From Mytilus trossulus (lineage: Eukaryota), in NCBI RefSeq assembly GCF_036588685.1, contig NC_086376.1, forward strand, positions 20,088,001-20,152,000: a stretch of DNA of 64,000 nucleotides. Direction: 5' to 3'. Position 1 is the first letter of the stretch. Each line of letters opens with the position of its first letter. Positions 33,801-57,505 of the stretch are shown one piece after another. Position numbers and translations under genes: made by a program. The notes beneath the pieces are model-generated. The model was not told the origin of the DNA. It saw nothing but the letters and a program-made list of their open reading frames with translations, and searched no databases.

Positions 33801-33943
33801 CGGTAAAGTTGCAATAAAGAAAGTCATCAAAACCTCAACTGAGTTTGAAGCTTTTCTCAGCCTCAAACACGAAAACATCGTCGAAGCCATTGAAATCATC
33901 GAAGCCGAAGAATTTGCCTTCGTTTTGATGGAATTTGCTGAAT

Positions 33944-39132: not shown

Positions 39133-39273
39133 AATTCGGAGATGTTTTTGAATACATAATGAACAACGGTCTCATGTCCGTTGAAGCCACCCTCTCTCTT
39201 TTCTCTCAGGTTGTCAAAGCAATCGAATACTGCCACTCAATTGGAATCGCCCACAATGACATTAAATTAGAAA

Positions 39274-40856
39274 GGCACTGGCTACGATTACATGGAAATG
39301 TAACAATAATAAAAATATTATTGTTACATAGGAGACTAAATGCCGGAATGCAAAGGCGGATAAGGAACCGATTAATTACGAATGTAACAATAATTACTGA
39401 GGCTACGGTTACATGGCGTTATTGTTACATGAAAAACAGCAATCATTAAACTTAAATCTTGCCGGTATAGTTTTGTTGCCTTAATCTTGCATATGTACGA
39501 AATAATACTTGTAACAATGATAAATAATAAATATTATCGTTAACGAATGGTGTTTAAATTTTTTTTCTAACGTATAAATGGTTTTGGTGTTTTAAAGATA
39601 CTACTTAAGGATGTTCGCTGCTCAGTTTCATAATAAATAACTTTTCATAAAACTTGTATGTATTGGTAGGGAATAAATTTAGGGATCAAAATAGCAAAAT
39701 AAAATATAGGGGTCCATGTGCTTGTTTTCGAGATATTAGCCATTGGAATTTTGGCGGGAAAATGTTCTCTCTTGATTTTTCATAGCTTTATCATTGACCA
39801 GTTAAAGTTCTCAAATACTATTATAAAATAAATAAAATTTTATAAGACTTTAACAAATGACTTATAATTATACATGTAAAAGATTTATAAAAAGAAAAAT
39901 GGGGGTTCATGGGGATTTTTTTTTAATTATTCAAATGGATAAAACCAGAGGATTCCAAAAATCTGACAAAAATTCCGAAACATGACAAGCAGACATCCTT
40001 AAGATAAGTAGTGCCAAAGGCGAAAATATAGACCAATGGTTTGTTGTTGAGAACTCGGGCTGAGAAAAGTGTTCACTTTAAGTATTTTAAAACTGCACAT
40101 CTACTCGTATTACTGTCATTATACAATGCACAATGGATGAAGAGATTCTTGTGACCAATTTTGTTGTGGGTGAAAAATTTAAAACTTGGGATTCGTTTGA
40201 AACAAAACTGAAACAATATCAAGACACAAATTTCATTCAGCTATACAAACGCAGTTCTAAAAAAAATTAACGGACGGCAATGTGACCATACTGAAAGATG
40301 ACATAAAACTACATCACATGCTTCCAACCAAAATATTAGATGAGAACATAAACATTGCTCGAGTGAAAAAGTATTTCCACCGGAAGCATGGCAAACATTA
40401 AAGGTCGCATTATCATCAAAAAGGGATATCGCAGAATGGAACTGTACAGTATGTGATACGGACGTTCACAGTGCGGCATCACTGGTGTGTGATGGCTGCT
40501 TGGAGTGGTTTCACCAAAAATGTGTCGGACTCAGAAATGCTCCAAAAACCACTTACTGGATATGTAGAAAATGTCATTGCAAATAAATAATTAAAGAATT
40601 TATATTTAATAATTGTATGTATTGTAAATATAAAATAAATGTCTTTAATTTTTATTATCTAGTACATTTTAATAGACCCATTGTATATTGCTGTTTTTCA
40701 TGTAACAATAACGCCATGTAACCGTAGCCTCAGTAATTATTGTTACATTCGTAATTAATCGGTTCCTTACCCGACCTTGCATTCCGTCATTTAGTCTCCT
40801 ATGTAACAATAATATTTTTATTATTGTTACATTTCCATGTAACCGTAGCCAGTGCC
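39274..40856 (+). mobile_element. Internally deleted Mutator-like element (MULE) with transposase remnant and PHD finger
   Basis: ~170-bp TIRs starting GGCACTGGCTACG; 9-bp TSD AATTAGAAA; remnants MDEEIL..VGEKFKTWDSFETKLKQY (40133) and a C4HC3 motif (40437-40586). Confidence 0.9.
39609..39998. mobile_element. Kolobok-like MITE nested in the MULE
   Basis: TTAA|GGATGT...ACATCC|TTAA. Confidence 0.65.
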
Positions 40857-42396
40857 AATTAGAAAACGTCTTGTTGTCTAATGGTTGTGTCAAATTGGCC
40901 GACTTTGGATTTGCCAAGTCGTCCGATATTGTTGCCGAATCTGAAGAATTTTGTGGAACCCTCCTCCCATACGCTGCCCCAGAAGTTATTATGGGAATGG
41001 AACACAGCACCATGAAAGCAGATATGTGGAGTATGGGAGTTATGCTCTACGTCATGCTCTTCGGAGCTTTCCCATTCTCCGATAGTGACGCTACCTCTAT
41101 GGTCCAATCTCAAATCTCAAACACCCTCTTTTTCCCAGAAAACACTAACGAAACGTTAAAGTCTCTCATCTCCTCTATGCTTGAACCCTCTATTGAAAAA
41201 CGCGCTAATGCAAGCTCAGTCCTTCTTGCCTTGAGCCAGTTTTAAACACATAATTAAGCATCCTTGAAATCACAATATGTTGTGATTTCAAGGATGCCTT
41301 TTTTTTTGTCTGAGCTGTTGTTACGGTAAACCGTGCGGACCTTCTTTTAATGTTACTTGATCAAATACGGTTACGTATTGCGGTTACGGTAAACACATGT
41401 TAACGTTTGGTCTACATTCCTTCTTTAGGAATGGTACTTCTTGTTTTATCAATGAGACACTGCTAAGTGATTAAGACTATTTGTTAGTCTAGTTTACCGT
41501 ACCACCAAACAATCCTTTAACATTTCAGTTTCCCGTTTCTTTGTATTAAATGTTTGAGAAACAAGATAAGGATATTGATAGGTAAAGATTTCAGGGTTTC
41601 TGTCCATTGATATCGAAACATATCAGCCGCGAGCCAGAGAGTTTCACCTTGTGTCGAGCGACTGAACACCCATAATCTCTTATTCGTTCTTTCACTATGT
41701 TTGTGCTAGACAAACGTAGGCCTGACAACGTCTTGTGACGTCGCTGATAACTTCTCAAACACTATGACGTTGCTGATATTATCTGCTCAGAGCAAAGACA
41801 TTTCTAGGTAAACTAATTGTATGAGGGTACGGTAAACAAAGATGCAATACCAAAATAAAAGGACCCAGTATTATACTTTATAGTCCAGTTTACCGTATCA
41901 GCATACATTTTTTTTTGTCTTCTGTGGAATTCATTTCTAATCCGAAACTCATTGAATAAATTGGAAGCAAATATCCCCTTGAACATTCAGACAGTGATTT
42001 AATTTCGTTTAGTTTGTTGTGGTTAACCTTCAGCGTGCGAAGAAACGGTAAACTGCAGAGTATACTTATACTAGTTGAGCTACGGTAAACCTTTAATAGA
42101 ATTTTTATGGTTACGGTAAACATTGCAGTCACAAGCTATGGAAAAGTTTATGGTAACGGTAAACATATAAGAAAAATGACTTAGAAATGTTAACCGTTTG
42201 CAAGAGTAGGTACTATTAATGAAAAGGGGAGCTATTTCCAAAAATGTACTATTTAATTATGTAAGGAAGCATTTATTAAGACTTGTCTCCCCTTGAACAT
42301 CAAGACATGGAAGAGGCCATATCGGTCGATTTACTATATAAGGCTTGCATTTCACTATTTGGGATCTTTATCACATCACATCCACGCCAGTTTAAA

Positions 42397-43138
42397 ATGG
42401 ATTTTTTAATGAACAATGGACTCTCAAATGTTGTAGCTCTTACTGAAGAAGTTTTCTCTGCCTCTAGCGAAATATTCGGTAAAGTTGCAATAAAGAAAGT
42501 CATCAAAACCTCAACTGAGTTTGAAGCTTTTCTCAGCCTCAAACACGAAAACATCGTCGAAGCCATTGAAATCATCGAAGCCGAAGAATTTGCCTTCGTT
42601 TTGATGGAATTTGCTGAATTCGGAGATGTTTTTGAATACATAATGAACAACGAACGGTCTCGTGTCCGTTGAAGCCACCCTCTCTCTTTTCTCTCAGGTT
42701 GTCAAAGCAATCGAATACTGCCACTCAATTGGAATCGCCCACAATGACATTAAATTAGAAAACGTCTTGTTGTCTAATGGTTGTGTCAAATTGGCCGACT
42801 TTGGATTTGCCAAGTCGTCCGATATTGTTGCCGAATCTGAAGAATTTTGTGGAACCCTCCCATACGCTGCCCCAGAAGTTATTATGGGAATGGAACACAG
42901 CACCATGAAAGCCGATATGTGGAGTATGGGAGTTATGCTCTACGTCATGCTCTTCGGAGCTTTCCCATTCTCCGATAGTGACGCTACCTCTATGGTCCAA
43001 TCTCAAATCTCAAACACCCTCTTTTTCCCAGAAAACACTAACGAAACGTTAAAGTCTCTCATCTCCTCTATGCTTGAACCCTCTATTGAAAAACGCGCTA
43101 ATGCAAGCTCAGTCCTTCTTGCCTTGAGCCAGTTTTAA
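42397..43138 (+). pseudogene. Kinase copy 2, frameshifted
   Basis: 4-bp duplication (aacaacgaacggt, ~42650) splits the ORF. Confidence 0.85.
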
Positions 43139-44289
43139 ACACATAATTAAGCATCCTTGAAATCACAATATGTTGTGATTTCAAGGATGCCTTTTTTTTT
43201 GTCTGAGCTGTTGTTACGGTAAACCGTGCGGACCTTCTTTTAATGTTACTTGATCAAATACGGTTACGTATTGCGGTTACGGTAAACACATGTTAACGTT
43301 TGGTCTACATTCCTTCTTTAGGAATGGTACTTCTTGTTTTATCAATGAGACACTGCTAAGTGATTAAGACTATTTGTTAGTCTAGTTTACCGTACCACCA
43401 AACAATCCTTTAACATTTCAGTTTCCCGTTTCTTTGTATTAAATGTTTGAGAAACAAGATAAGGATATTGATAGGTAAAGATTTCAGGGTTTCTGTCCAT
43501 TGATATCGAAACATATCAGCCGCGAGCCAGAGAGTTTCACCTTGTGTCGAGCGACTGAACACCCATAATCTCTTATTTGTTCTTTCACTATGTTTGTGCT
43601 AGACAAACGTAGGCCTGACAACGTCTTGTGACGTCGCTGATAACTTCTCAAACACTATGACGTTGCTGATATTATCTGCTCAGAGCAAAGACATTTCTAG
43701 GTAAACTAATTGTATGAGGGTACGGTAAACAAAGATGCAATACCAAAATAAAAGGACCCAGTATTATACTTTATAGTCCAGTTTACCGTATCAGCATACA
43801 TTTTTTTTTGTCTTCTGTGGAATTCATTTCTAATCCGAAACTCATTGAATAAATTGGAAGCAAATATCCCCTTGAACATTCAGACAGTGATTTAATTTCG
43901 TTTAGTTTGTTGTGGTTAACCTTCAGCGTGCGAAGAAACGGTAAACTGCAGAGTATACTTATACTAGTTGAGCTACGGTAAACCTTTAATAGAATGTTTA
44001 TGGTTACGGTAAACATTGCAGTCACAAGCTATGGAAAAGTTTATGGTAACGGTAAACATATAAGAAAAATGACTTAGAAATGTTAACCGTTTGCAAGAGT
44101 AGGTACCATTAATGAAAAGGGGAGCTATTTCCAAAAATGTACTATTTAATTATGTAAGGAAGCATTTATTAAGACTTGTCTCCCCTTGAACATCAAGACA
44201 TGGAAGAGGCCATATCGGCCGATTTACTATATAAGGCTTGCATTTCACTATTTGGGATCTTTATCACATTACATCCACGCCAGTTTAAA

Positions 44290-45029
44290 ATGGATTTTTT
44301 AATGAACAGTGGACTCTCAAATGTTGTAGCTCTTACTGAAGAAGTTTTCTCTGCCTCTAGCGAAATATTCGGTAAAGTTGCAATAAAGAAAGTCATCAAA
44401 ACCTCAACTGAGTTTGAAGCTTTTCTCAGCCTCAAACACGAAAACATCGTCGAAGCCATTGAAATCATCGAAGCCGAAGAATTTGCCTTCGTTTTGATGG
44501 AATTTGCTGAATTCGGAGATGTTTTTGAATACATAATGAACAACGGTCTCATGTCCGTTGAAGCCACCCTCTCTCTTTTCTCTCAGGTTGTCAAAGCAAT
44601 CGAATACTGCCACTCAATTGGAATCGCCCACAATGACATTAAATTAGAAAACGTCTTGTTGTCTAATGGTTGTGTCAAATTGGCCGACTTTGGATTTGCC
44701 AAGTCGTCCGATATTGTTGCCGAATCTGAAGAATTTTGTGGAACACTCCCATACGCTGCCCCAGAAGTTATTATGGGAATGGAACACAGCACCATGAAAG
44801 CCGATATGTGGAGTATGGGAGTTATGCTCTACGTCATGCTCTTCGGAGCTTTCCCATTCTCCGATAGTGACGCTACCTCTATGGTCCAATCTCAAATCTC
44901 AAACACCCTCTTTTTCCCAGAAAACACTAACGAAACGTTTTAAAGTCTCTCATCTCCTCTATGCTTGAACCCTCTATTGAAAAACGCGCTAATGCAAGCT
45001 CAGTCCTTCTTGCCTTGAGCCAGTTTTAA
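44290..45029 (+). pseudogene. Kinase copy 3, C-terminally truncated by +2 T frameshift
   Basis: aacgttttaaag vs aacgttaaag; stop at 44943 removes subdomain XI (could be a sequencing error). Confidence 0.75.
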
Positions 45030-46179
45030 ACACATAATTAAGCATCCTTGAAATCACAATATGTTGTGATTTCAAGGATGCCTTTTTTTTGTCTGAGCTG
45101 TTGTTACGGTAAACCGTGCGGACCTTCTTTTAATGTTACTTGATCAAATACGGTTACGTATTGCGGTTACGGTAAACACATGTTAACGTTTGGTCTACAT
45201 TCCTTCTTTAGGAATGGTACTTCTTGTTTTATCAATGAGACACTGCTAAGTGATTAAGACTATTTGTTAGTCTAGTTTACCGTACCACCAAACAATCCTT
45301 TAACATTTCAGTTTCCCGTTTCTTTGTATTAAATGTTTGAGAAACAAGATAAGGATATTGATAGGTAAAGATTTCAGGGTTTCTGTCCATTGATATCGAA
45401 ACATATCAGCCGCGAGCCAGAGAGTTTCACCTCGTGTCGAGCGACTGAACACCCATAATCTCTTATTCGTTCTTTCACTATGTTTGTGCTAGACAAACGT
45501 AGGCCTGACAACGTCTTGTGACGTCGCTGATAACTTATCAAACACTATGACGTTGCTGATATTATCTGCTCAGAGCAAAGACATTTCTAGGTAAACTAAT
45601 TGTATGAGGGTACGGTAAACAAAGATGCAATACCAAAATAAAAGGACCCAGTATTATACTTTATAGTCCAGTTTACCGTATCAGCATACAGTTTTTTTTG
45701 TCTTCTGTGGAATTCATTTCTAATCCGAAACTCATTGAATAAATTGGAAGCAAATATCCCCTTGAACATTCAGACAGTGATTTAATTTCGTTTAGTTTGT
45801 TGTGGTTAACCTTCAGCGTGCGAAGAAACGGTAAACTGCAGAGTATACTTATACTAGTTGAGCTACGGTAAACCTTTAATAGAATTTTTATGGTTACGGT
45901 AAACATTGCAGTCACAAGCTATGGAAAAGTTTATGGTAACGGTAAACATATAAGAAAAATGACTTAGAAATGTTAACCGTTTGCAAGAGTAGGTACCATT
46001 AATGAAAAGGGGAGCTATTTCCAAAAATGTACTATTTAATTATGTAAGGAAGCATTTATTAAGACTTGTCTCCCCTTGAACATCAAGACATGGAAGAGGC
46101 CATATCGGCCGATTTACTATATAAGGCTTGCATTTCACTATTTGGGATCTTTATCACATCACATCCACGCCAGTTTAAA

Positions 46180-46917
46180 ATGCATTTTTTAATGAACAGT
46201 GGACTCTCAAATGTTGTAGCTCTTACTGAAGAAGTTTTCTCTGCCTCTAGCGAAATATTCGGTAAAGTTGCAATAAAGAAAGTCATCAAAACCTCAACTG
46301 AGTTTGAAGCTTTTCTCAGCCTCAAACACGAAAACATCGTCGAAGCCATTGAAATCATCGAAGCCGAAGAATTTGCCTTCGTTTTGATGGAATTTGCTGA
46401 ATTCGGAGATGTTTTTGAATACATAATGAACAACGGTCTCATGTCCGTTGAAGCCACCCTCTCTCTTTTCTCTCAGGTTGTCAAAGCAATCGAATACTGC
46501 CACTCAATTGGAATCGCCCACAATGACATTAAATTAGAAAACGTCTTGTTGTCTAATGGTTGTGTCAAATTGGCCGACTTTGGATTTGCCAAGTCGTCCG
46601 ATATTGTTGCCGAATCTGAAGAATTTTGTGGAACCCTCCCATACGCTGCCCCAGAAGTTATTATGGGAATGGAACACAGCACCATGAAAGCCGATATGTG
46701 GAGTATGGGAGTTATGCTCTACGTCATGCTCTTCGGAGCTTTCCCATTCTCCGATAGTGACGCTACCTCTATGGTCCAATCTCAAATCTCAAACACCCTC
46801 TTTTTCCCAGAAAACACTAACGAAACGTTAAAGTCTCTCATCTCCTCTATGCTTGAACCCTCTATTGAAAAACGCGCTAATGCAAGCTCAGTCCTTCTTG
46901 CCTTGAGCCAGTTTTAA
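46180..46917 (+). CDS. Intronless Ser/Thr kinase, CAMK group, TSSK-like, 245 aa (copy 4, D2H)
   Basis: VAIK, HNDIKLEN, DFG, FCGTLPYAAPE, DMWSMGV; ATG downstream of a TATA box. Confidence 0.85.
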   Translation: MHFLMNSGLSNVVALTEEVFSASSEIFGKVAIKKVIKTSTEFEAFLSLKHENIVEAIEIIEAEEFAFVLMEFAEFGDVFEYIMNNGLMSVEATLSLFSQVVKAIEYCHSIGIAHNDIKLENVLLSNGCVKLADFGFAKSSDIVAESEEFCGTLPYAAPEVIMGMEHSTMKADMWSMGVMLYVMLFGAFPFSDSDATSMVQSQISNTLFFPENTNETLKSLISSMLEPSIEKRANASSVLLALSQF

Positions 46918-46929
46918 ACACATAATTAA

Positions 46930-46979
46930 GCATCCTTGAAATCACAATATGTTGTGATTTCAAGGATGCCTTTTTTTTT
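46930..46979 (+). terminator. 18-bp perfect hairpin + T9 after the kinase stop (representative; one per spacer); function unproven
   Basis: GCATCCTTGAAATCACAA-tatg-TTGTGATTTCAAGGATGC-c-TTTTTTTTT, starting 12 nt after TAA. Confidence 0.55.
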
Positions 46980-48006
46980 GTCTGAGCTGTTGTTACGGTA
47001 AACCGTGCGGACCTTCTTTTAATGTTACTTGATCAAATACGGTTACGTATTGCGGTTACGGTAAACACATGTTAACGTTTGGTCTACATTCCTTCTTTAG
47101 GAATGGTACTTCTTGTTTTATCAATGAGACACTGCTAAGTGATTAAGACTATTTGTTAGTCTAGTTTACCGTACCACCAAACAATCCTTTAACATTTCAG
47201 TTTCCCGTTTCTTTGTATTAAATGTTTGAGAAACAAGATAAGGATATTGATAGGTAAAGATTTCAGGGTTTCTGTCCATTGATATCGAAACATATCAGCC
47301 GCGAGCCAGAGAGTTTCACCTTGTGTCGAGCGACTGAACACCCATAATCTCTTATTTGTTCTTTCACTATGTTTGTGCTAGACAAACGTAGGCCTGACAA
47401 CGTCTTGTGACGTCGCTGATAACTTCTCAAACACTATGACGTTGCTGATATTATCTGCTCAGAGCAAAGACATTTCTAGGTAAACTAATTGTATGAGGGT
47501 ACGGTAAACAAAGATGCAATACCAAAATAAAAGGACCCAGTATTATACTTTATAGTCCAGTTTACCGTATCAGCATACAGTTTTTTTTGTCTTCTGTGGA
47601 ATTCATTTCTAATCCGAAACTCATTGAATAAATTGGAAGCAAATATCCCCTTGAACATTCAGACAGTGATTTAATTTCGTTTAGTTTGTTGTGGTTAACC
47701 TTCAGCGTGCGAAGAAACGGTAAACTGCAGAGTATACTTATACTAGTTGAGCTACGGTAAACCTTTAATAGAATTTTTATGGTTACGGTAAACATTGCAG
47801 TCACAAGCTATGGAAAAGTTTATGGTAACGGTAAACATATAAGAAAAATGACTTAGAAATGTTAACCGTTTGCAAGAGTAGGTACCATTAATGAAAAGGG
47901 GAGCTATTTCCAAAAATGTACTATTTAATTATGTAAGGAAGCATTTATTAAGACTTGTCTCCCCTTGAACATCAAGACATGGAAGAGGCCATATCGGCCG
48001 ATTTAC

Positions 48007-48013
48007 TATATAA
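48007..48013 (+). promoter_or_regulatory. TATA box of the kinase unit (representative; present in all 12)
   Basis: cTATATAAgg ~62 bp upstream of ATG, Inr-like TCACATC ~35 bp downstream of it. Confidence 0.7.
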
Positions 48014-48068
48014 GGCTTGCATTTCACTATTTGGGATCTTTATCACATCACATCCACGCCAGTTTAAA

Positions 48069-48806
48069 ATGGATTTTTTAATGAACAGTGGACTCTCAAA
48101 TGTTGTAGCTCTTACTGAAGAAGTTTTCTCTGCCTCTAGCGAAATATTCGGTAAAGTTGCAATAAAGAAAGTCATCAAAACCTCAACTGAGTTTGAAGCT
48201 TTTCTCAGCCTCAAACACGAAAACATCGTCGAAGCCATTGAAATCATCGAAGCCGAAGAATTTGCCTTCGTTTTGATGGAATTTGCTGAATTCGGAGATG
48301 TTTTTGAATACATAATGAACAACGGTCTCATGTCCGTTGAAGCCACCCTCTCTCTTTTCTCTCAGGTTGTCAAAGCAATCGAATACTGCCACTCAATTGG
48401 AATCGCCCACAATGACATTAAATTAGAAAACGTCTTGTTGTCTAATGGTTGTGTCAAATTGGCCGACTTTGGATTTGCCAAGTCGTCCGATATTGTTGCC
48501 GAATCTGAAGAATTTTGTGGAACCCTCCCATACGCTGCCCCAGAAGTTATTATGGGAATGGAACACAGCACCATGAAAGCCGATATGTGGAGTATGGGAG
48601 TTATGCTCTACGTCATGCTCTTCGGAGCTTTCCCATTCTCCGATAGTGACGCTACCTCTATGGTCCAATCTCAAATCTCAAACACCCTCTTTTTCCCAGA
48701 AAACACTAACGAAACGTTAAAGTCTCTCATCTCCTCTATGCTTGAACCCTCTATTGAAAAACGCGCTAATGCAAGCTCAGTCCTTCTTGCCTTGAGCCAG
48801 TTTTAA
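48069..48806 (+). CDS. Intronless TSSK-like kinase copy 5
   Basis: Intact 245-aa ORF, aaaATGg context. Confidence 0.88.
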   Translation: MDFLMNSGLSNVVALTEEVFSASSEIFGKVAIKKVIKTSTEFEAFLSLKHENIVEAIEIIEAEEFAFVLMEFAEFGDVFEYIMNNGLMSVEATLSLFSQVVKAIEYCHSIGIAHNDIKLENVLLSNGCVKLADFGFAKSSDIVAESEEFCGTLPYAAPEVIMGMEHSTMKADMWSMGVMLYVMLFGAFPFSDSDATSMVQSQISNTLFFPENTNETLKSLISSMLEPSIEKRANASSVLLALSQF

Positions 48807-49949
48807 ACACATAATTAAGCATCCTTGAAATCACAATATGTTGTGATTTCAAGGATGCCTTTTTTTTTGTCTGAGCTGTTGTTACGGTAAACCGTGCGGA
48901 CCTTCTTTTAATGTTACTTGATCAAATACGGTTACGTATTGCGGTTACGGTAAACACATGTTAACGTTTGGTCTACATTCCTTCTTTAGGAATGGTACTT
49001 CTTGTTTTATCAATGAGACACTGCTAAGTGATTAAGACTATTTGTTAGTCTAGTTTACCGTACCACCAAACAATCCTTTAACATTTCAGTTTCCCGTTTC
49101 TTTGTATTAAATGTTTGAGAAACAAGATAAGGATATTGATAGGTAAAGATTTCAGGGTTTCTGTCCATTGATATCGAAACATATCAGCCGCGAGCCAGAG
49201 AGTTTCACCTTGTGTCGAGCGACTGAACACCCATAATCTCTTATTCGTTCTTTCACTATGTTTGTGCTAGACAAACGTAGGCCTGACAACGTCTTGTGAC
49301 GTCGCTGATAACTTCTCAAACACTATGACGTTGCTGATATTATCTGCTCAGAGCAAAGACATTTCTAGGTAAACTAATTGTATGAGGGTACGGTAAACAA
49401 AGATGCAATACCAAAATAAAAGGACCCACTTTATAGTCCAGTTTACCGTATCAGCATACAGTTTTTTTTGTCTTCTGTGGAATTCATTTCTAATCCGAAA
49501 CTCATTGAATAAATTGGAAGCAAATATCCCCTTGAACATTCAGACAGTGATTTAATTTCGTTTAGTTTGTTGTGGTTAACCTTCAGCGTGCGAAGAAACG
49601 GTAAACTGCAGAGTATACTTATACTAGTTGAGCTACGGTAAACCTTTAATAGAATTTTTATGGTTACGGTAAACATTGCAGTCACAAGCTATGGAAAAGT
49701 TTATGGTAACGGTAAACATATAAGAAAAATGACTTAGAAATGTTAACCGTTTGCCAGAGTAGGTACCATTAATGAAAAGGGGGGCTATTTCCAAAAATGT
49801 ACTATTTAATTATGTAAGGAAGCATTTATTAAGACTTGTCTCCCCTTGAACATCAAGACATGGAAGAGGCCATATCGGCCGATTTACTATATAAGGCTTG
49901 CATTTCACTATTTGGGATCTTTATCACATCACATCCACGCCAGTTTAAA

Positions 49950-50687
49950 ATGGATTTTTTAATGAACAGTGGACTCTCAAATGTTGTAGCTCTTACTGAA
50001 GAAGTTTTCTCTGCCTCTAGCGAAATATTCGGTAAAGTTGCAATAAAGAAAGTCATCAAAACCTCAACTGAGTTTGAAGCTTTTCTCAGCCTCAAACACG
50101 AAAACATCGTCGAAGCCATTGAAATCATCGAAGCCGAAGAATTTGCCTTCGTTTTGATGGAATTTGCTGAATTCGGAGATGTTTTTGAATACATAATGAA
50201 CAACGGTCTCATGTCCGTTGAAGCCACCCTCTCTCTTTTCTCTCAGGTTGTCAAAGCAATCGAATACTGCCACTCAATTGGAATCGCCCACAATGACATT
50301 AAATTAGAAAACGTCTTGTTGTCTAATGGTTGTGTCAAATTGGCCGACTTTGGATTTGCCAAGTCGTCCGATATTGTTGCCGAATCTGAAGAATTTTGTG
50401 GAACCCTCCCATACGCTGCCCCAGAAGTTATTATGGGAATGGAACACAGCACCATGAAAGCCGATATGTGGAGTATGGGAGTTATGCTCTACGTCATGCT
50501 CTTCGGAGCTTTCCCATTCTCCGATAGTGACGCTACCTCTATGGTCCAATCTCAAATCTCAAACACCCTCTTTTTCCCAGAAAACACTAACGAAACGTTA
50601 AAGTCTCTCATCTCCTCTATGCTTGAACCCTCTATTGAAAAACGCGCTAATGCAAGCTCAGTCCTTCTTGCCTTGAGCCAGTTTTAA
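49950..50687 (+). CDS. Intronless TSSK-like kinase copy 6
   Basis: Intact 245-aa ORF. Confidence 0.88.
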   Translation: MDFLMNSGLSNVVALTEEVFSASSEIFGKVAIKKVIKTSTEFEAFLSLKHENIVEAIEIIEAEEFAFVLMEFAEFGDVFEYIMNNGLMSVEATLSLFSQVVKAIEYCHSIGIAHNDIKLENVLLSNGCVKLADFGFAKSSDIVAESEEFCGTLPYAAPEVIMGMEHSTMKADMWSMGVMLYVMLFGAFPFSDSDATSMVQSQISNTLFFPENTNETLKSLISSMLEPSIEKRANASSVLLALSQF

Positions 50688-51838
50688 ACACATAATTAAG
50701 CATCCTTGAAATCACAATATGTTGTGATTTCAAGGATGCCTTTTTTTTTGTCTGAGCTGTTGTTACGGTAAACCGTGCGGACCTTCTTTTAATGTTACTT
50801 GATCAAATACGGTTACGTATTGCGGTTACGGTAAACACATGTTAACGTGTGGTCTACATTCCTTCTTTAGGAATGGTACTTCTTGTTTTATCAATGAGAC
50901 ACTGCTAAGTGATTAAGACTATTTGTTAGTCTAGTTTACCGTACCACCAAACAATCCTTTAACATTTCAGTTTCCCGTTTCTTTGTATTAAATGTTTGAG
51001 AAACAAGATAAGGATATTGATAGGTAAAGATTTCAGGGTTTCTGTCCATTGATATCGAAACATATCAGCCGCGAGCCAGAGAGTTTCACCTTGTGTCGAG
51101 CGACTGAACACCCATAATCTCTTATTCGTTCTTTCACTATGTTTGTGCTAGACAAACGTAGGCCTGACAACGTCTTGTGACGTCGCTGATAACTTCTCAA
51201 ACACTATGACGTTGCTGATATTATCTGCTCAGAGCAAAGACATTTCTAGGTAAACTAATTGTATGAGGGTACGGTAAACAAAGATGCAATACCAAAATAA
51301 AAGGACCCAGTATTATACTTTATAGCCCAGTTTACCGTATCAGCATACAGTTTTTTTTGTCTTCTGTGGAATTCATGTCTAATCCGAAACTCATTGAATA
51401 AATTGGAAGCAAATATCCCCTTGAACATTCAGACAGTGATTTAATTTCGTTTAGTTTGTTGTGGTTAACCTTCAGCGTGCGAAGAAACGGTAAACTGCAG
51501 AGTATACTTATACTAGTTGAGCTACGGTAAACCTTTAATAGAATTTTTATGGTTACGGTAAACATTGCAGTCACAAGCTATGGAAAAGTTTATGGTAACG
51601 GTAAACATATAAGAAAAATGACTTAGAAATGTTAACCGTTTGCAAGAGTAGGTACCATTAATGAAAAGGGGAGCTATTTCCAAAAATGTACTATTTAATT
51701 ATGTAAGGAAGCATTTATTAAGACTTGTCTCCCCTTGAACATCAAGACATGGAAGAGGCCATATCGGCCGATTTACTATATAAGGCTTGCATTTCACTAT
51801 TTGGGATCTTTATCACATCACATCCACGCCAGTTTAAA

Positions 51839-52576
51839 ATGGATTTTTTAATGAACAGTGGACTCTCAAATGTTGTAGCTCTTACTGAAGAAGTTTTCTC
51901 TGCCTCTAGCGAAATATTCGGTAAAGTTGCAATAAAGAAAGTCATCAAAACCTCAACTGAGTTTGAAGCTTTTCTCAGCCTCAAACACGAAAACATCGTC
52001 GAAGCCATTGAAATCATCGAAGCCGAAGAATTTGCCTTCGTTTTGATGGAATTTGCTGAATTCGGAGATGTTTTTGAATACATAATGAACAACGGTCTCA
52101 TGTCCGTTGAAGCCACCCTCTCTCTTTTCTCTCAGGTTGTCAAAGCAATCGAATACTGCCACTCAATTGGAATCGCCCACAATGACATTAAATTAGAAAA
52201 CGTCTTGTTGTCTAATGGTTGTGTCAAATTGGCCGACTTTGGATTTGCCAAGTCGTCCGATATTGTTGCCGAATCTGAAGAATTTTGTGGAACCCTCCCA
52301 TACGCTGCCCCAGAAGTTATTATGGGAATGGAACACAGCACCATGAAAGCCGATATGTGGAGTATGGGAGTTATGCTCTACGTCATGCTCTTCGGAGCTT
52401 TCCCATTCTCCGATAGTGACGCTACCTCTATGGTCCAATCTCAAATCTCAAACACCCTCTTTTTCCCAGAAAACACTAACGAAACGTTAAAGTCTCTCAT
52501 CTCCTCTATGCTTGAACCCTCTATTGAAAAACGCGCTAATGCAAGCTCAGTCCTTCTTGCCTTGAGCCAGTTTTAA
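51839..52576 (+). CDS. Intronless TSSK-like kinase copy 7
   Basis: Intact 245-aa ORF. Confidence 0.88.
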   Translation: MDFLMNSGLSNVVALTEEVFSASSEIFGKVAIKKVIKTSTEFEAFLSLKHENIVEAIEIIEAEEFAFVLMEFAEFGDVFEYIMNNGLMSVEATLSLFSQVVKAIEYCHSIGIAHNDIKLENVLLSNGCVKLADFGFAKSSDIVAESEEFCGTLPYAAPEVIMGMEHSTMKADMWSMGVMLYVMLFGAFPFSDSDATSMVQSQISNTLFFPENTNETLKSLISSMLEPSIEKRANASSVLLALSQF

Positions 52577-53727
52577 ACACATAATTAAGCATCCTTGAAA
52601 TCACAATATGTTGTGATTTCAAGGATGCCTTTTTTTTTGTCTGAGCTGTTGTTACGGTAAACCGTGCGGACCTTCTTTTAATGTTACTTGATCAAATACG
52701 GTTACGTATTGCGGTTACGGTAAACACATGTTAACGTTTGGTCTACATTCCTTCTTTAGGAATGGTACTTCTTGTTTTATCAATGAGACACTGCTAAGTG
52801 ATTAAGACTATTTGTTAGTCTAGTTTACCGTACCACCAAACAATCCTTTAACATTTCAGTTTCCCGTTTCTTTGTATTAAATGTTTGAGAAACAAGATAA
52901 GGATATTGATAGGTAAAGATTTCAGGGTTTCTGTCCATTGATATCGAAACATATCAGCCGCGAGCCAGAGAGTTTCACCTTGTGTCGAGCGACTGAACAC
53001 CCATAATCTCTTATTCGTTCTTTCACTATGTTTGTGCTAGACAAACGTAGGCCTGACAACGTCTTGTGACGTCGCTGATAACTTCTCAAACACTATGACG
53101 TTGCTGATATTATCTGCTCAGAGCAAAGACATTTCTAGGTAAACTAATTGTATGAGGGTACGGTAAACAAAGATGCAATACCAAAATAAAAGGACCCAGT
53201 ATTATACTTTATAGTCCAGTTTACCGTATCAGCATACAGTTTTTTTTGTCTTCTGTGGAATTCATTTCTAATCCGAAACTCATTGAATAAATTGGAAGCA
53301 AATATCCCCTTGAACATTCAGACAGTGATTTAATTTCGTTTAGTTTGTTGTGGTTAACCTTCAGCGTGCGAAGAAACGGTAAACTGCAGAGTATACTTAT
53401 ACTAGTTGAGCTACGGTAAACCTTTAATAGAATTTTTATGGTTACGGTAAACATTGCAGTCACAAGCTATGGAAAAGTTTATGGTAACGGTAAACATATA
53501 AGAAAAATGACTTAGAAATGTTAACCGTTTGCCAGAGTAGGTACCATTAATGAAAAGGGGGGCTATTTCCAAAAATGTACTATTTAATTATGTAAGGAAG
53601 CATTTATTAAGACTTGTCTCCCCTTGAACATCAAGACATGGAAGAGGCCATATCGGCCGATTTACTATATAAGGCTTGCATTTCACTATTTGGGATCTTT
53701 ATCACATCACATCCACGCCAGTTTAAA

Positions 53728-54465
53728 ATGGATTTTTTAATGAACAGTGGACTCTCAAATGTTGTAGCTCTTACTGAAGAAGTTTTCTCTGCCTCTAGCG
53801 AAATATTCGGTAAAGTTGCAATAAAGAAAGTCATCAAAACCTCAACTGAGTTTGAAGCTTTTCTCAGCCTCAAACACGAAAACATCGTCGAAGCCATTGA
53901 AATCATCGAAGCCGAAGAATTTGCCTTCGTTTTGATGGAATTTGCTGAATTCGGAGATGTTTTTGAATACATAATGAACAACGGTCTCATGTCCGTTGAA
54001 GCCACCCTCTCTCTTTTCTCTCAGGTTGTCAAAGCAATCGAATACTGCCACTCAATTGGAATCGCCCACAATGACATTAAATTAGAAAACGTCTTGTTGT
54101 CTAATGGTTGTGTCAAATTGGCCGACTTTGGATTTGCCAAGTCGTCCGATATTGTTGCCGAATCTGAAGAATTTTGTGGAACCCTCCCATACGCTGCCCC
54201 AGAAGTTATTATGAGAATGGAACACAGCACCATGAAAGCCGATATGTGGAGTATGGGAGTTATGCTCTACGTCATGCTCTTCGGAGCTTTCCCATTCTCC
54301 GATAGTGACGCTACCTCTATGGTCCAATCTCAAATCTCAAACACCCTCTTTTTCCCAGAAAACACTAACGAAACGTTAAAGTCTCTCATCTCCTCTATGC
54401 TTGAACCCTCTATTGAAAAACGCGCTAATGCAAGCTCAGTCCTTCTTGCCTTGAGCCAGTTTTAA
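53728..54465 (+). CDS. Intronless TSSK-like kinase copy 8 (G>R after APE)
   Basis: Intact ORF; EVIMRMEH instead of EVIMGMEH. Confidence 0.86.
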   Translation: MDFLMNSGLSNVVALTEEVFSASSEIFGKVAIKKVIKTSTEFEAFLSLKHENIVEAIEIIEAEEFAFVLMEFAEFGDVFEYIMNNGLMSVEATLSLFSQVVKAIEYCHSIGIAHNDIKLENVLLSNGCVKLADFGFAKSSDIVAESEEFCGTLPYAAPEVIMRMEHSTMKADMWSMGVMLYVMLFGAFPFSDSDATSMVQSQISNTLFFPENTNETLKSLISSMLEPSIEKRANASSVLLALSQF

Positions 54466-55616
54466 ACACATAATTAAGCATCCTTGAAATCACAATATGT
54501 TGTGATTTCAAGGATGCCTTTTTTTTTGTCTGAGCTGTTGTTACGGTAAACCGTGCGGACCTTCTTTTAATGTTACTTGATCAAATACGGTTACGTATTG
54601 CGGTTACGGTAAACACATGTTAACGTTTGGTCTACATTCCTTCTTTAGGAATGGTACTTCTTGTTTTATCAATGAGACACTGCTAAGTGATTAAGACTAT
54701 TTGTTAGTCTAGTTTACCGTACCACCAAACAATCCTTTAACATTTCAGTTTCCCGTTTCTTTGTATTAAATGTTTGAGAAACAAGATAAGGATATTGATA
54801 GGTAAAGATTTCAGGGTTTCTGTCCATTGATATCGAAACATATCAGCCGCGAGCCAGAGAGTTTCACCTTGTGTCGAGCGACTGAACACCCATAATCTCT
54901 TATTCGTTCTTTCACTATGTTTGTGCTAGACAAACGTAGGCCTGACAACGTCTTGTGACGTCGCTGATAACTTCTCAAACACTATGACGTTGCTGATATT
55001 ATCTGCTCAGAGCAAAGACATTTCTAGGTAAACTAATTGTATGAGGGTACGGTAAACAAAGATGCAATACCAAAATAAAAGGACCCAGTATTATACTTTA
55101 TAGTCCAGTTTACCGTATCAGCATACAGTTTTTTTTGTCTTCTGTGGAATTCATTTCTAATCCGAAACTCATTGAATAAATTGGAAGCAAATATCCCCTT
55201 GAACATTCAGACAGTGATTTAATTTCGTTTAGTTTGTTGTGGTTAACCTTCAGCGTGCGAAGAAACGGTAAACTGCAGAGTATACTTATACTAGTTGAGC
55301 TACGGTAAACCTTTAATAGAATTTTTATGGTTACGGTAAACATTGCAGTCACAAGCTATGGAAAAGTTTATGGTAACGGTAAACATATAAGAAAAATGAC
55401 TTAGAAATGTTAACCGTTTGCAAGAGTAGGTACCATTAATGAAAAGGGGAGCTATTTCCAAAAATGTACTATTTAATTATGTAAGGAAGCATTTATTAAG
55501 ACTTGTCTCCCCTTGAACATCAAGACATGGAAGAGGCCATATCGGCCGATTTACTATATAAGGCTTGCATTTCACTATTTGGGATCTTTATCACATCACA
55601 TCCACGCCAGTTTAAA

Positions 55617-56354
55617 ATGGATTTTTTAATGAACAGTGGACTCTCAAATGTTGTAGCTCTTACTGAAGAAGTTTTCTCTGCCTCTAGCGAAATATTCGGT
55701 AAAGTTGCAATAAAGAAAGTCATCAAAACCTCAACTGAGTTTGAAGCTTTTCTCAGCCTCAAACACGAAAACATCGTCGAAGCCATTGAAATCATTGAAG
55801 CCGAAGAATTTGCCTTCGTTTTGATGGAATTTGCTGAATTCGGAGATGTTTTTGAATACATAATGAACAACGGTCTCATGTCCGTTGAAGCCACCCTCTC
55901 TCTTTTCTCTCAGGTTGTCAAAGCAATCGAATACTGCCACTCAATTGGAATCGCCCACAATGACATTAAATTAGAAAACGTCTTGTTGTCTAATGGTTGT
56001 GTCAAATTGGCCGACTTTGGATTTGCCAAGTCGTCCGATATTGTTGCCGAATCTGAAGAATTTTGTGGAACCCTCCCATACGCTGCCCCAGAAGTTATTA
56101 TGGGAATGGAACACAGCACCATGAAAGCCGATATGTGGAGTATGGGAGTAATGCTCTACGTCATGCTCTTCGGAGCTTTCCCATTCTCCGATAGTGACGC
56201 TACCTCTATGGTCCAATCTCAAATCTCAAACACCCTCTTTTTCCCAGAAAACACTAACGAAACGTTAAAGTCTCTCATCTCCTCTATGCTTGAACCCTCT
56301 ATTGAAAAACGCGCTAATGCAAGCTCAGTCCTTCTTGCCTTGAGCCAGTTTTAA
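55617..56354 (+). CDS. Intronless TSSK-like kinase copy 9
   Basis: Intact ORF; two synonymous changes seen. Confidence 0.88.
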   Translation: MDFLMNSGLSNVVALTEEVFSASSEIFGKVAIKKVIKTSTEFEAFLSLKHENIVEAIEIIEAEEFAFVLMEFAEFGDVFEYIMNNGLMSVEATLSLFSQVVKAIEYCHSIGIAHNDIKLENVLLSNGCVKLADFGFAKSSDIVAESEEFCGTLPYAAPEVIMGMEHSTMKADMWSMGVMLYVMLFGAFPFSDSDATSMVQSQISNTLFFPENTNETLKSLISSMLEPSIEKRANASSVLLALSQF

Positions 56355-57505
56355 ACACATAATTAAGCATCCTTGAAATCACAATATGTTGTGATTTCAA
56401 GGATGCCTTTTTTTTTGTCTGAGCTGTTGTTACGGTAAACCGTGCGGACCTTCTTTTAATGTTACTTGATCAAATACGGTTACGTATTGCGGTTACGGTA
56501 AACACATGTTAACGTTTGGTCTACATTCCTTCTTTAGGAATGGTACTTCTTGTTTTATCAATGAGACACTGCTAAGTGATTAAGACTATTTGTTAGTCTA
56601 GTTTACCGTACCACCAAACAATCCTTTAACATTTCAGTTTCCCGTTTCTTTGTATTAAATGTTTGAGAAACAAGATAAGGATATTGATAGGTAAAGATTT
56701 CAGGGTTTCTGTCCATTGATATCGAAACATATCAGCCGCGAGCCAGAGAGTTTCACCTTGTGTCGAGCGACTGAACACCCATAATCTCTTATTCGTTCTT
56801 TCACTATGTTTGTGCTAGACAAACGTAGGCCTGACAACGTCTTGTGACGTCGCTGATAACTTCTCAAACACTATGACGTTGCTGATATTATCTGCTCAGA
56901 GCAAAGACATTTCTAGGTAAACTAATTGTATGAGGGTACGGTAAACAAAGATGCAATACCAAAATAAAAGGACCCAGTATTATACTTTATAGTCCAGTTT
57001 ACCGTATCAGCATACAGTTTTTTTTGTCTTCTGTGGAATTCATTTCTAATCCGAAACTCATTGAATAAATTGGAAGCAAATATCCCCTTGAACATTCAGA
57101 CAGTGATTTAATTTCGTTTAGTTTGTTGTGGTTAACCTTCAGCGTGCGAAGAAACGGTAAACTGCAGAGTATACTTATACTAGTTGAGCTACGGTAAACC
57201 TTTAATAGAATTTTTATGGTTACGGTAAACATTGCAGTCACAAGCTATGGAAAAGTTTATGGTAACGGTAAACATATAAGAAAAATGACTTAGAAATGTT
57301 AACCGTTTGCAAGAGTAGGTACCATTAATGAAAAGGGGAGCTATTTCCAAAAATGTACTATTTAATTATGTAAGGAAGCATTTATTAAGACTTGTCTCCC
57401 CTTGAACATCAAGACATGGAAGAGGCCATATCGGCCGATTTACTATATAAGGCTTGCATTTCACTATTTGGGATCTTTATCACATCACATCCACGCCAGT
57501 TTAAA

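What the first reader, a model, noticed from the sequence alone, without database searches (positions are those of the whole stretch)
48069..48806. Rewired kinase: non-RD, phosphomimetic activation loop, no Gly-rich loop
The catalytic K (VAIK), D (HND-IKLEN), DFG and APE are intact. HRD is HND, and the activation segment reads SEEFCGT where TSSK/AMPK-family kinases have TFCGS, so Glu replaces the phospho-Thr and the phosphate-binding Arg is lost together. The GxGxxG loop is absent (VVALTEEVFSA) and there is no regulatory tail. This suggests a minimal, phosphorylation-independent enzyme or a dominant-acting pseudokinase (inference).
Basis: partly seen in the sequence, partly recalled or inferred. 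Interest (0 to 1): 0.78.

Follow-up and report, generated by a model that had tools for sequence, protein, structure and literature searches.

The report
Rewired mini-kinase in mussel gene arrays
A mussel genome carries about fifty near-identical copies of a very small protein-kinase gene that keeps its catalytic residues but has lost the usual on-switch and the glycine-rich ATP loop; selection keeps the gene, but its activity and place of expression are untested.

Summary
Window 48069-48806 (+) is an intact 245-aa ORF with a protein-kinase domain (Pfam 4e-51). K33, E41, D116, K118, N121, DFG and APE are present. HRD reads HND, Glu148 sits where MARK and TSSK kinases have the T-loop Thr, GxGxxG is replaced by T-E-E-V-F-S, and the protein ends 13 residues after the subdomain-XI Arg.

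The same changes occur in 16 of 16 family sequences (69-100% identity). The nearest short relatives (38-43% identity) keep GxGxxG, HRD and Thr.

The gene is one unit of a 1.89-kb tandem array (window 32508-61897; 12 copies, 8 intact), one of three arrays on three chromosomes of what is evidently Mytilus trossulus (at least 49 intact copies). RefSeq names the protein 'TSSK3-like'. The scan met the two sister arrays before on other DNA (s1-820514, s1-820519).

dN/dS between arrays is 0.14-0.18 at dS 0.26, so the gene does not evolve neutrally. The protein is strongly acidic (pI 4.4; relatives named TSSK are near 9).

My best reading is a T-loop-independent, probably active minimal kinase (0.55). 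A non-catalytic decoy is the main rival (0.3). Activity and tissue of expression remain untested. This is a new variant of a known kind.

The parts
48069..48806 (+). Intronless CDS of the 245-aa mini-kinase (the finding), stop codon included
   Evidence: ORF and translation. Pfam Pkinase 4e-51. AlphaFold2 model with pLDDT 93.9 and pTM 0.91.
48111..48134 (+). Codons L15-A22 (LTEEVFSA): the glycine-free equivalent of the GxGxxG nucleotide loop
   Evidence: Aligned to LGEGSFGK of P0024. Lies at the beta1-beta2 turn of the model. T16 is found in 15 of 16 family rows, against G in 42 of 48 outgroup rows that have a residue in that column.
48165..48167 (+). Codon K33 (VAIK lysine)
   Evidence: At least 90% conserved in the 69-row alignment A2 and present in 16 of 16 family rows.
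48408..48431 (+). Codons H114-N121 (HNDIKLEN): catalytic loop in non-RD form
   Evidence: D116, K118 and N121 are invariant in A2. Position 115 is N, C, S or G and never R in 16 of 16 family rows.
48465..48545 (+). Activation segment from DFG (133-135) to APE (157-159), with K138, S146, E147, E148 (T-loop position) and T152
   Evidence: phmmer alignment to MARK4. A1 and A3. Per-site table.
48006..48015 (+). TATA-box-like CTATATAAGG, 61 nt before the ATG. It is identical in all three arrays, and the start context is AAAATGG.
   Evidence: Three-array alignment. Position. Its role as a promoter is inferred.
48819..48868 (+). 18-bp perfect hairpin (48819-48836 / 48841-48858, loop 48837-48840) followed by T9 (48860-48868), starting 13 nt after the stop codon
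   Evidence: Fold dG -29.3 kcal/mol, z -6.9. The C1 array keeps the stems despite an 18-nt loop insertion and one A>G change that still allows a G-U pair. No Rfam family reaches its gathering score.
46995..47836 (.). Spacer upstream of this copy, with seven forward and two reverse exact ACGGTAAAC motifs
   Evidence: Positions. There are 0 copies in the 34.6 kb of window outside the array and 0 in the two insertions. Motifs near the promoter and just after the T-run are conserved in array C1.
32508..61897 (+). Whole tandem array: units of about 1889 bp, 99.4-99.9% identical, with 12 CDS copies
   Evidence: blastn of one unit against the window. CDS copies. A contig of run X1 joins 48880 back to 47000.
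46180..46917 (+). Intact sister copy (D2H). Further intact copies lie at 49950-50687, 51839-52576, 53728-54465 (G163R), 55617-56354 (two synonymous changes), 57506-58243 and 59394-60131.
33721..41245 (+). First CDS copy, broken by two insertions (33944-39132 and 39274-40856). Other broken copies start at 42397 (frameshift near nt 257), 44290 (frameshift near nt 651) and 61264 (array ends at 61897).

Best explanation
This is a real gene kept by selection. It belongs to a mussel-lineage subfamily of CAMKL/TSSK-like kinases reduced to a bare 245-aa catalytic domain. In this genome it is amplified to about 50 intact intronless copies in three homogenised tandem arrays.

Shown:
- The full phosphotransfer set is invariant (K33, E41, D116, K118, N121, D133, APE, R232).
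- The T-loop switch is dismantled: Thr to Glu148, HRD-Arg to a variable residue, alphaC Arg lost.
- The three loop glycines are replaced by T, E and S.
- The beta2-beta3 and beta3-alphaC links are shortened.
- The protein has a net charge of about -20.

Inferred:
- The enzyme folds directly into an active-like conformation and needs no T-loop phosphorylation. Glu148 may pair with the retained K138.
- It still binds ATP-Mg through K33, N121 and D133, with an unusual acidic lid.
- It is made in bulk from many TATA-driven copies. By homology this is probably in the male germ line.
- It acts on very basic substrates such as sperm nuclear basic proteins or histones.
For: Kinase domain and fold:
- Pfam Pkinase 4e-51.
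- AlphaFold2 pLDDT 93.9 and pTM 0.91, with five N-lobe strands and a short alphaC.
- Foldseek top hits are AMPK, SIK3 and MARK kinase domains, TM 0.83.

Catalytic residues are invariant in 16 of 16 family rows at 69-100% identity.

Selection:
- NG86 dN/dS is 0.175 (C4 vs C1) and 0.141 (C3 vs C1) at dS 0.26.
- The excess of synonymous changes has p 3e-9 and 2e-11.
- Between C4 and C1 the CDS is 91.9% identical, against 52% in the distal spacer.
- At least 49 full-length copies have no stop: 8 on C4, 28 on C3, 13 on C1.

Lineage:
- The same protein type is annotated in M. trossulus, M. edulis, M. galloprovincialis and M. coruscus.
- The short relatives P0024, P0183 and P0212 (250-257 aa) keep GxGxxG, HRD and Thr. 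The three losses therefore arose on the family's long stem branch (1.56 changes per column, quick tree).

Charge: pI 4.4 and net charge -13 to -22 in the family, against a median near +8 in the outgroup.

Background: canonical TSSKs need T-loop Thr phosphorylation, and T>A inactivates TSSK3 (passages of PMC7401350).

Expression: RNA libraries of two studies hold CDS contigs. In X12, 48075-48880 is covered, while 47000-47850 has only a 32-nt piece.
Against: - No activity, ATP-binding or expression experiment exists. Three literature searches found no paper on this family.
- All three loop glycines are lost and two Glu sit in the lid. This could hinder phosphate binding, and that pattern is common in pseudokinases (recalled).
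- With the HRD Arg and the alphaC Arg gone, Glu148 has only K138 to pair with, so 'phosphomimetic' is only partly apt.
- Ser146 and Thr152 are conserved and could still be phosphorylated.
- The RNA evidence is weak. All runs are contigs, the spacer is covered at lower depth in X15 and X16, X1 behaves like DNA, and the tool itself warns that holes prove nothing.
- 'Testis-specific' is only a homology-derived name. The quick tree does not place the family inside the named TSSK clade.
- The basic-substrate idea rests on charge alone.
Confidence: 0.55

Rival explanations
1. It is a non-catalytic kinase-fold protein: a pseudokinase, a nucleotide-binding scaffold, or a decoy. Made in excess from about 50 copies, it would bind partners or substrates of canonical TSSK/MARK-type kinases and so act dominantly. 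The known parallel is SMOK-Tcr, a dominant-negative sperm kinase.
For: - GxGxxG has lost all three glycines, and conserved Glu residues sit in the lid.
- The beta3-alphaC link and alphaC are truncated; alphaC is 8 residues in the model.
- The stem branch is long, suggesting a change of function.
- The massive copy number fits action by dosage.
- There is a precedent for a dominant-negative sperm kinase in transmission distortion (passages of PMC6394906).
Against: - K33, E41, D116, K118, N121 and D133 are invariant in 16 of 16 family rows. A protein that no longer catalyses usually lets at least one of them drift (recalled criterion).
- The aromatic tip residue of the loop (F20) is kept in 15 of 16 rows.
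- The predicted fold matches active-type AMPK domains.
Confidence: 0.3
2. It is an active kinase that is still switched by phosphorylation, but at Ser146 (T-loop position -2) or Thr152 (the CGT position) instead of the canonical Thr.
For: - S146 and T152 are present in 16 of 16 family rows.
- S at position -2 is also the majority residue in canonical relatives.
Against: - The basic pocket that reads a T-loop phosphate is mostly gone (N115, T40).
- The flanking residues are already acidic (E145, E147, E148), which leaves little room for a charge switch. This point is inference.
Confidence: 0.1
3. It is a functionless amplified sequence: a satellite-like array of a dead or dying retrocopy whose open frames persist only because the amplification is recent.
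For: - Units within an array are 99.4-99.9% identical.
- 4 of the 12 copies in the window are broken.
- C4 vs C3 has only 11 differences, with dN/dS 0.46.
Against: - Between arrays dN/dS is 0.14-0.18 at dS 0.26.
- The CDS is far better conserved than the spacer.
- Intact homologues of 242-267 aa exist at 69-81% identity.
- C1-type and C3/C4-type proteins both occur in other Mytilus species.
- The TATA box, start context and 3' hairpin are conserved.
Confidence: 0.04

Closest known systems
TSSK family (TSSK3, TSSK6), the smallest AMPK-related sperm kinases
   Same: - The best named hits are TSSK proteins, and RefSeq calls it 'TSSK3-like'.
- The PDB TSSK6 chain matches at 5.6e-33.
- The gene is intronless like most Tssk genes, and the protein is little more than a kinase domain (PMC7401350 passages).
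   Different: - TSSKs need the T-loop Thr; here it is Glu.
- HRD has become HND, the glycine loop is lost, the protein is 245 aa and its pI is 4.4, against about 9.
- The quick tree leaves it outside the named TSSK clade, in an unresolved CAMKL polytomy.
- There are about 50 tandem copies, against about four TSSK genes in the oyster kinome (PMC4883820 passage).
MARK / AMPK / SIK kinase domains (CAMKL)
   Same: - These are the best solved-structure matches by sequence (MARK4, 3.3e-38) and by fold (AMPK alpha, TM 0.83).
- The DFGF...(T)FCG(S/T)..YAAPE activation segment has the same layout.
   Different: - Those kinases are RD kinases switched on by an upstream kinase at the T-loop Thr.
- They carry UBA/AID or other regulatory tails, and this protein has none.
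Short canonical relatives P0024, P0183, P0212 (unnamed sources, 250-257 aa)
   Same: - They are the closest non-family sequences (38-43% identity).
- They too end right after the kinase domain, and P0024 is also acidic with pI 4.4.
   Different: - They keep GEGS[FY]GK, HRD and the T-loop Thr.
- G000 has no closer orthologue of P0024 than the arrays themselves.
Kinases with Glu in place of the activation-loop phospho-residue (phosphorylase kinase gamma; recalled, not tested here) and non-RD kinases in general
   Same: - An acidic residue sits at the phospho-site, and no activating phosphorylation is needed.
- Within my own sample, P0043 and P0053 independently combine HND with Glu at this site. 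Five HRD proteins also carry Glu there.
   Different: - Those examples keep the glycine-rich loop.
- In PhK-gamma the RD arginine that the Glu contacts is also kept (recalled).
SMOK / Tcr sperm motility kinase of the mouse t-haplotype, and ampliconic germ-line gene families
   Same: - It is a kinase gene family tied by homology naming to sperm function.
- An altered kinase can act dominantly there (PMC6394906 passages).
   Different: - No evidence here of germ-line expression, of drive, or of a wild-type/variant pair.
- That SMOK belongs near MARK kinases, and that Smok is multi-copy, are recalled and were not tested.
Replication-dependent histone gene arrays (recalled)
   Same: Both are tandem arrays of short intronless TATA-driven genes with a stem-loop just after the stop codon.
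   Different: - The hairpin here is 18 bp plus T9 and is not the histone stem-loop. No Rfam family reaches its threshold.
- The product is an enzyme.

Membership tests
Eukaryotic protein kinase superfamily (Pfam PF00069) | Domain match above the curated cut-off | tested here: met
   174.4 bits against a cut-off of 31.7, E 4e-51
Eukaryotic protein kinase superfamily (Pfam PF00069) | Catalytic residues: beta3 Lys, alphaC Glu, HxD Asp, catalytic-loop Lys/Asn, DFG Asp, APE, subdomain-XI Arg | tested here: met
   K33, E41, D116, K118, N121, D133, E159 and R232 are present here and in 16 of 16 family rows
Eukaryotic protein kinase superfamily (Pfam PF00069) | Glycine-rich loop GxGxxG | tested here: not met
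   It reads T16-E17-E18-V19-F20-S21. The Pfam alignment only starts at residue 36, profile position 43.
Eukaryotic protein kinase superfamily (Pfam PF00069) | Bilobal kinase fold | tested here: met
   AlphaFold2 pLDDT 93.9. Foldseek TM 0.83 to AMPK alpha. This is a prediction, not a solved structure.
Eukaryotic protein kinase superfamily (Pfam PF00069) | ATP binding and phosphotransfer | not testable with these tools
   Needs recombinant protein
TSSK family | Groups with named TSSKs in a tree | tested here: inconclusive
   Quick IQ-TREE of 69 rows. The mini-family is one clade (SH-aLRT 100), sister to P0024 (87, with a long-branch warning). It lies beside the named TSSK clade, not inside it. 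The fork joining them has support 83 and is drawn open. The careful search did not finish.
TSSK family | T-loop Thr whose phosphorylation is required for activity (PMC7401350) | tested here: not met
   E148 is at that position in 16 of 16 family rows
TSSK family | Testis-specific expression | tested here: inconclusive
   The only data are contigs of 3 RNA-library runs (gut metatranscriptomes, 2 studies) and one run of uncertain type. No tissue information.
TSSK family | Intronless gene, protein little more than the kinase domain | tested here: met
   Single uninterrupted ORF. The N-terminus MEFL/MDFL is shared by the family.
Pseudokinase (criterion recalled: loss of at least one of VAIK-Lys, HRD-Asp, DFG-Asp) | At least one of the three residues missing | tested here: not met
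   All three are present and invariant in the family
Non-RD kinases | Residue before the catalytic Asp is not Arg | tested here: met
   N115 here; N, C, S or G in 16 of 16 family rows
Ampliconic germ-line / drive-type gene family (SMOK-Tcr-like) | Multi-copy tandem amplification | tested here: met
   Three arrays with at least 49 intact copies
Ampliconic germ-line / drive-type gene family (SMOK-Tcr-like) | Germ-line expression and effect on transmission | not testable with these tools
   Needs tissue RNA data and crosses

The most novel reading that the evidence does not exclude
The three homogenised arrays are an ampliconic germ-line system. In it, a kinase stripped of every regulatory input (no T-loop switch, no tail, an altered nucleotide lid) acts dominantly by dosage. 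The setting would be a genetic-conflict or gamete-competition process: sperm competition, transmission distortion as with mouse SMOK-Tcr, or the paternal-mitochondria pathway peculiar to mussels. A less bold sub-case is that it is the smallest active eukaryotic protein kinase and shows that GxGxxG is dispensable.
Probability: 0.1. Interest if true: 0.85.

Novelty: new variant of a known kind. Interest (0 to 1): 0.5.

Why it matters
If active, this 245-aa enzyme would be a natural minimal kinase. It would work without the glycine-rich loop and without activation-loop phosphorylation, which makes it a compact model for what a kinase core really needs.

If inactive, it would be a pseudokinase that selection keeps with every catalytic residue intact, and that would be unusual.

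Either way, about 50 selected, homogenised copies of an enzyme gene, each with its own TATA promoter, repeated 9-mer motif and 3' hairpin, point to a need for bulk or burst expression. In mussels that could bear on spermiogenesis, early development or gamete conflict.

It also matters for annotation. The 'TSSK3-like' label hides that the defining T-loop Thr is absent.

Tried and rejected
- I considered that FGKV at residues 27-30 might be the remnant of the Gly loop fused to VAIK by a deletion. I rejected this because alignment A1 and the model place LTEEVFSA at the beta1-beta2 turn and give three separate N-terminal strands.
- I considered an upstream start. The ORF runs back to 47955, and the 275-aa RefSeq models of M. 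edulis and M. galloprovincialis start at the ATG at 47979. I rejected it because that ATG lies upstream of the conserved TATA box, and the C1 array has no ATG in that extension.
- I considered Pol III transcription because of the hairpin plus T9. It is unlikely: the CDS itself holds nine runs of four or more T.
- I checked whether the 'TSTK1' mRNA of M. edulis testis (PMC3144882) is this gene. Neither qPCR primer occurs in the window. That clone matched sea-urchin TSSK1 at 4e-70, so it is probably a canonical TSSK. This check is weak evidence.
- Rfam gave nothing above gathering score for the unit.
- The 50%-representative search was dominated by multi-domain gene models. It added only a few short relatives.
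- The careful tree search did not finish within the time limit, so I report only the quick tree.
- I did not ask for supplementary files. Sex-biased expression tables of bivalve transcriptome papers (for example Table S4 of PMC5800059) may bear on expression and were not seen.

Rows dropped:
- For the family alignment I used the window protein, P0002, P0004-P0014 and P0017-P0019 (16 rows). From the 120 listed I left out the truncated or fused models P0001, P0003, P0015, P0016 and P0020-P0023.
- A2 holds 69 rows picked by hand from those 120.
- dN/dS used one copy per array.
- Read laying used 4 of the 22 runs listed.
Full report
**What is at the coordinates**

Window 48069-48806 (+) is an uninterrupted ORF of 245 codons plus TAA. 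The window has no N.

- Pfam finds a protein-kinase domain (PF00069, 174 bits, E 4e-51) over residues 36-239, which correspond to profile positions 43-258. The first 35 residues are too divergent to be aligned by the model.
- The best solved-structure relatives by sequence are MARK4, MARK3, MARK1 and MARK2 (3e-38), followed by MELK, CIPK, SIK3, AMPK and TSSK6 (5.6e-33).

**The observation, motif by motif**

- K33 (VAIK), H114-N115-D116-I-K118-L-E-N121, D133-F-G and A157-P-E are all present.
- In the phmmer alignment to MARK4, 'ESEEFCGT' lies on 'KLDTFCGS', so E148 replaces the T-loop Thr.
- Two canonical intronless TSSK-like genes of the same genome read GEGTYAKV / HRD / SKTFCGS and GSGSYSKV / HRD / SRTYCGS.
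- In alignment A1, L15-T-E-E-V-F-S-A22 lies on L-G-E-G-S-F-G-K of P0024.
- An AlphaFold2 model built on a 69-row alignment is confident (pLDDT 93.9, pTM 0.91). It places strands at 9-14, 19-24 and 28-36, so T16-E18 is the beta1-beta2 turn. AlphaC is only eight residues long, 40-47.
- Foldseek matches the model to AMPK-alpha, SIK3 and MARK domains, TM 0.83.
- The protein stops 13 residues after the subdomain-XI Arg (R232).

Two details can be added. The Arg of the usual alphaC 'RE' is also lost (T40). K138, in the DFGFAK position, is kept. By recalled PKA numbering this corresponds to K189, one of the three residues that hold the T-loop phosphate.

**It is a family trait**

The word-indexed search gave 374 proteins at E <= 0.001 among 726 candidates. 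Named hits above 80% identity are all from Mytilus (M. trossulus, M. edulis, M. coruscus). Fourteen further unnamed proteins of 242-267 aa are 69-81% identical over 99-100% of the query.

In these 16 rows, window included (truncated and fused models left out, see Tried and rejected):
- the catalytic residues are invariant;
- position 115 is N, C, S or G and never R;
- position 148 is always E;
- position 16 is T in 15 rows and A in 1;
- positions 17 and 18 are acidic in 15 of 16 rows each;
- F20 is kept in 15 of 16 rows;
- S146 and T152 are kept in all 16.

The next nearest sequences, P0024, P0183 and P0212, are 250-257 aa and 38-43% identical. They are also bare kinase domains but keep GEGS[FY]GK, HRD and Thr.

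G000 holds no closer orthologue of P0024 than the arrays themselves.

A quick maximum-likelihood tree makes the 16 rows one clade (SH-aLRT 100) on a long stem (1.56 changes per column) with short internal branches. It is sister to P0024 (87, with a long-branch warning). The clade sits beside, not inside, the clade of proteins named TSSK, and the fork joining them is unresolved. The careful search did not finish. 'TSSK-like' is therefore a best-hit label, not a demonstrated membership.

Glu at the T-loop site is not unique. In my 53 outgroup rows seven carry it, and two of those (P0043, P0053) also read HND.

**Context the finding does not mention**

The gene is one unit of a head-to-tail array.
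- blastn of one unit (spacer 1151 nt plus CDS 738 nt) tiles window 32508-61897 at 99.4-99.9% identity.
- Of the 12 CDS copies, eight are intact. One is split by two insertions, two have frameshifts, and the last is cut by the array end.
- A six-frame search of the whole assembly finds two more arrays. C3:16309057-16364908 has 29 full-length copies at 96-97% aa identity, 28 of them without a stop. C1:26001448-26030024 has 13 intact copies at 89-90%.
- That makes at least 49 intact copies. The tool states that such counts are lower bounds.

Organism and annotation:
- The window's own protein sits in the same 90% cluster.
- That cluster also holds M. edulis, M. galloprovincialis and M. coruscus entries named 'TSSK3-like', 'TSSK', 'STK22' or 'MARK'. 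Several M. edulis accessions share one sequence.
- The organism is therefore evidently M. trossulus, and the gene model is already in RefSeq.
- Earlier agents of this scan described the C1 and C3 arrays (s1-820514, s1-820519). My counts agree with theirs.

**Selection**

I used one copy per array and Nei-Gojobori estimates.

| Pair | dS | dN | omega |
|---|---|---|---|
| C4 vs C1 | 0.259 | 0.046 | 0.175 |
| C3 vs C1 | 0.258 | 0.036 | 0.141 |
| C4 vs C3 (11 differences only) | 0.026 | 0.012 | 0.46 |

- The excess of synonymous changes is significant, binomial p 3e-9 and 2e-11.
- Between C4 and C1 the CDS is 91.9% identical, the proximal 430 nt of spacer 77%, and the distal spacer 52% with many gaps.
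- A C1-type protein exists in M. edulis (P0015), so the two array types predate that species split. This last step is inference.

**Gene anatomy**

These features are conserved among the three arrays:
- a CTATATAAGG box 61 nt before the ATG, and an AAAATGG start context;
- an 18-bp perfect hairpin plus T9 starting 13 nt after the stop codon (dG -29.3 kcal/mol, z -6.9). Array C1 keeps both arms despite an 18-nt insertion in the loop and one A>G change that still allows a G-U pair;
- several of the nine ACGGTAAAC motifs per spacer. The window has none outside the array.

No Rfam family reaches its threshold. The nearest poly(A) signals lie 300, 609 and 702 nt after the stop codon. Which 3' end the mRNA uses is unknown.

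**Expression**

Of 22 listed runs that hold the stretch, three are on record as RNA. All three are gut metatranscriptomes, from two studies. I laid four runs on 47000-48880.
- X12 has an 828-nt contig over 48075-48880 and a 149-nt piece at 47852-48000. It has nothing over 47000-47850 except a 32-nt piece with unlike flanks.
- X15 and X16 cover the CDS at depth 8-25 and parts of the spacer at depth 2-4.
- X1 covers everything and joins the unit end to the unit start, as DNA would.

All of these are contigs, and the tool warns that holes and depths prove little. This is compatible with transcription of the CDS but does not show it, and it says nothing about tissue.

**How it most likely works**

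Shown: the phosphotransfer residues are under constraint, and the regulatory inputs of a CAMKL kinase are gone. There is no T-loop Thr, no RD Arg, no alphaC Arg and no tail. According to a TSSK review, canonical TSSKs require T-loop Thr phosphorylation, and a T>A change inactivates TSSK3 (PMC7401350 passages).

Inferred: the domain adopts an active-like state on its own, with E148 perhaps held by K138. It binds ATP-Mg through K33, N121 and D133 under an unusual acidic lid.

The family has net charge -13 to -22 and pI 4.4-5.0, against a median near +8 and pI about 9 in the relatives named TSSK. Family-specific conserved acidic residues line the lid (E18) and the activation segment (E145, E148). 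This suggests very basic substrates, which is inference only. The copy number suggests bulk or burst production.

I put 0.55 on an active, T-loop-independent kinase. The rivals are a non-catalytic decoy or scaffold (0.3), an enzyme still regulated at S146 or T152 (0.1), and junk (about 0.04).

**Literature**

- Searches for TSSK + Mytilus (12 papers), for Mytilus + tandemly + kinase + intronless (2 papers), and for Mytilus + testis-specific serine + gonad + transcriptome (14 papers) listed nothing on this family or its arrays. I saw only listings and abstract starts, except for the passages read.
- The oyster kinome paper reports a number of TSSKs similar to its four MARKs and has no occurrence of the word 'tandem' (PMC4883820 passages).
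- The M. edulis testis 'TSTK1' clone is probably a different, canonical gene (primers absent from the window).

**Verdict**

This is a new variant of a known kind: an annotated but uncharacterised, lineage-specific, amplified mini-kinase with a dismantled activation switch and a glycine-free nucleotide loop. Interest is moderate (0.5). It would rise sharply if the protein proves active, or if expression ties the arrays to gamete biology.

Noticed in passing
window 13914-14486 (+): A 190-aa ORF matches the impB/mucB/samB (Y-family DNA polymerase) Pfam domain at 8.8e-26. It is probably one exon of a translesion polymerase gene.
   Followed up: partly
window 25403-26902 (+): A 499-aa open frame has no Pfam family at E <= 0.001. 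It is unusually long for AT-rich animal DNA, and its origin is unknown.
   Followed up: partly
window 33944-39132 and 39274-40856: Two insertions (about 5.2 kb and 1.6 kb) split the first kinase copy of the array. They hold no ORF of 150 aa or more and none of the 9-mer motifs. They are probably transposon remnants.
   Followed up: partly
window 3183-4322, 9370-9569, 11109-11327: Ordinary tandem repeats lie outside the array: a 161-bp period (3.8 copies), a 135-bp period (4.1 copies), and a 104-bp unit present at two places 1.7 kb apart.
   Followed up: no
window 47277-47308: A 32-nt piece of the spacer occurs in RNA-library contigs at higher depth, with flanks unlike the window. It is a short dispersed element shared with other loci.
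   Followed up: no
window 46995-47836 (and each spacer): The exact 9-mer ACGGTAAAC (extended consensus about GGTTACGGTAAAC) occurs nine times per spacer and nowhere else in the window. It is absent from 8.5 kb around three canonical TSSK-like genes of the same genome.
   Followed up: partly
L032 (G000:C1:26028500-26032500): The far end of the C1 array holds a degenerate copy: an open frame of 125 aa that matches residues 82-160 at 80% identity, after which the frame is lost.
   Followed up: no
proteins P0043 and P0053 (JGI sources, 300 aa): An unrelated pair of kinases independently combines HND with Glu at the T-loop position, while keeping the first loop glycine and the alphaC Arg.
   Followed up: no
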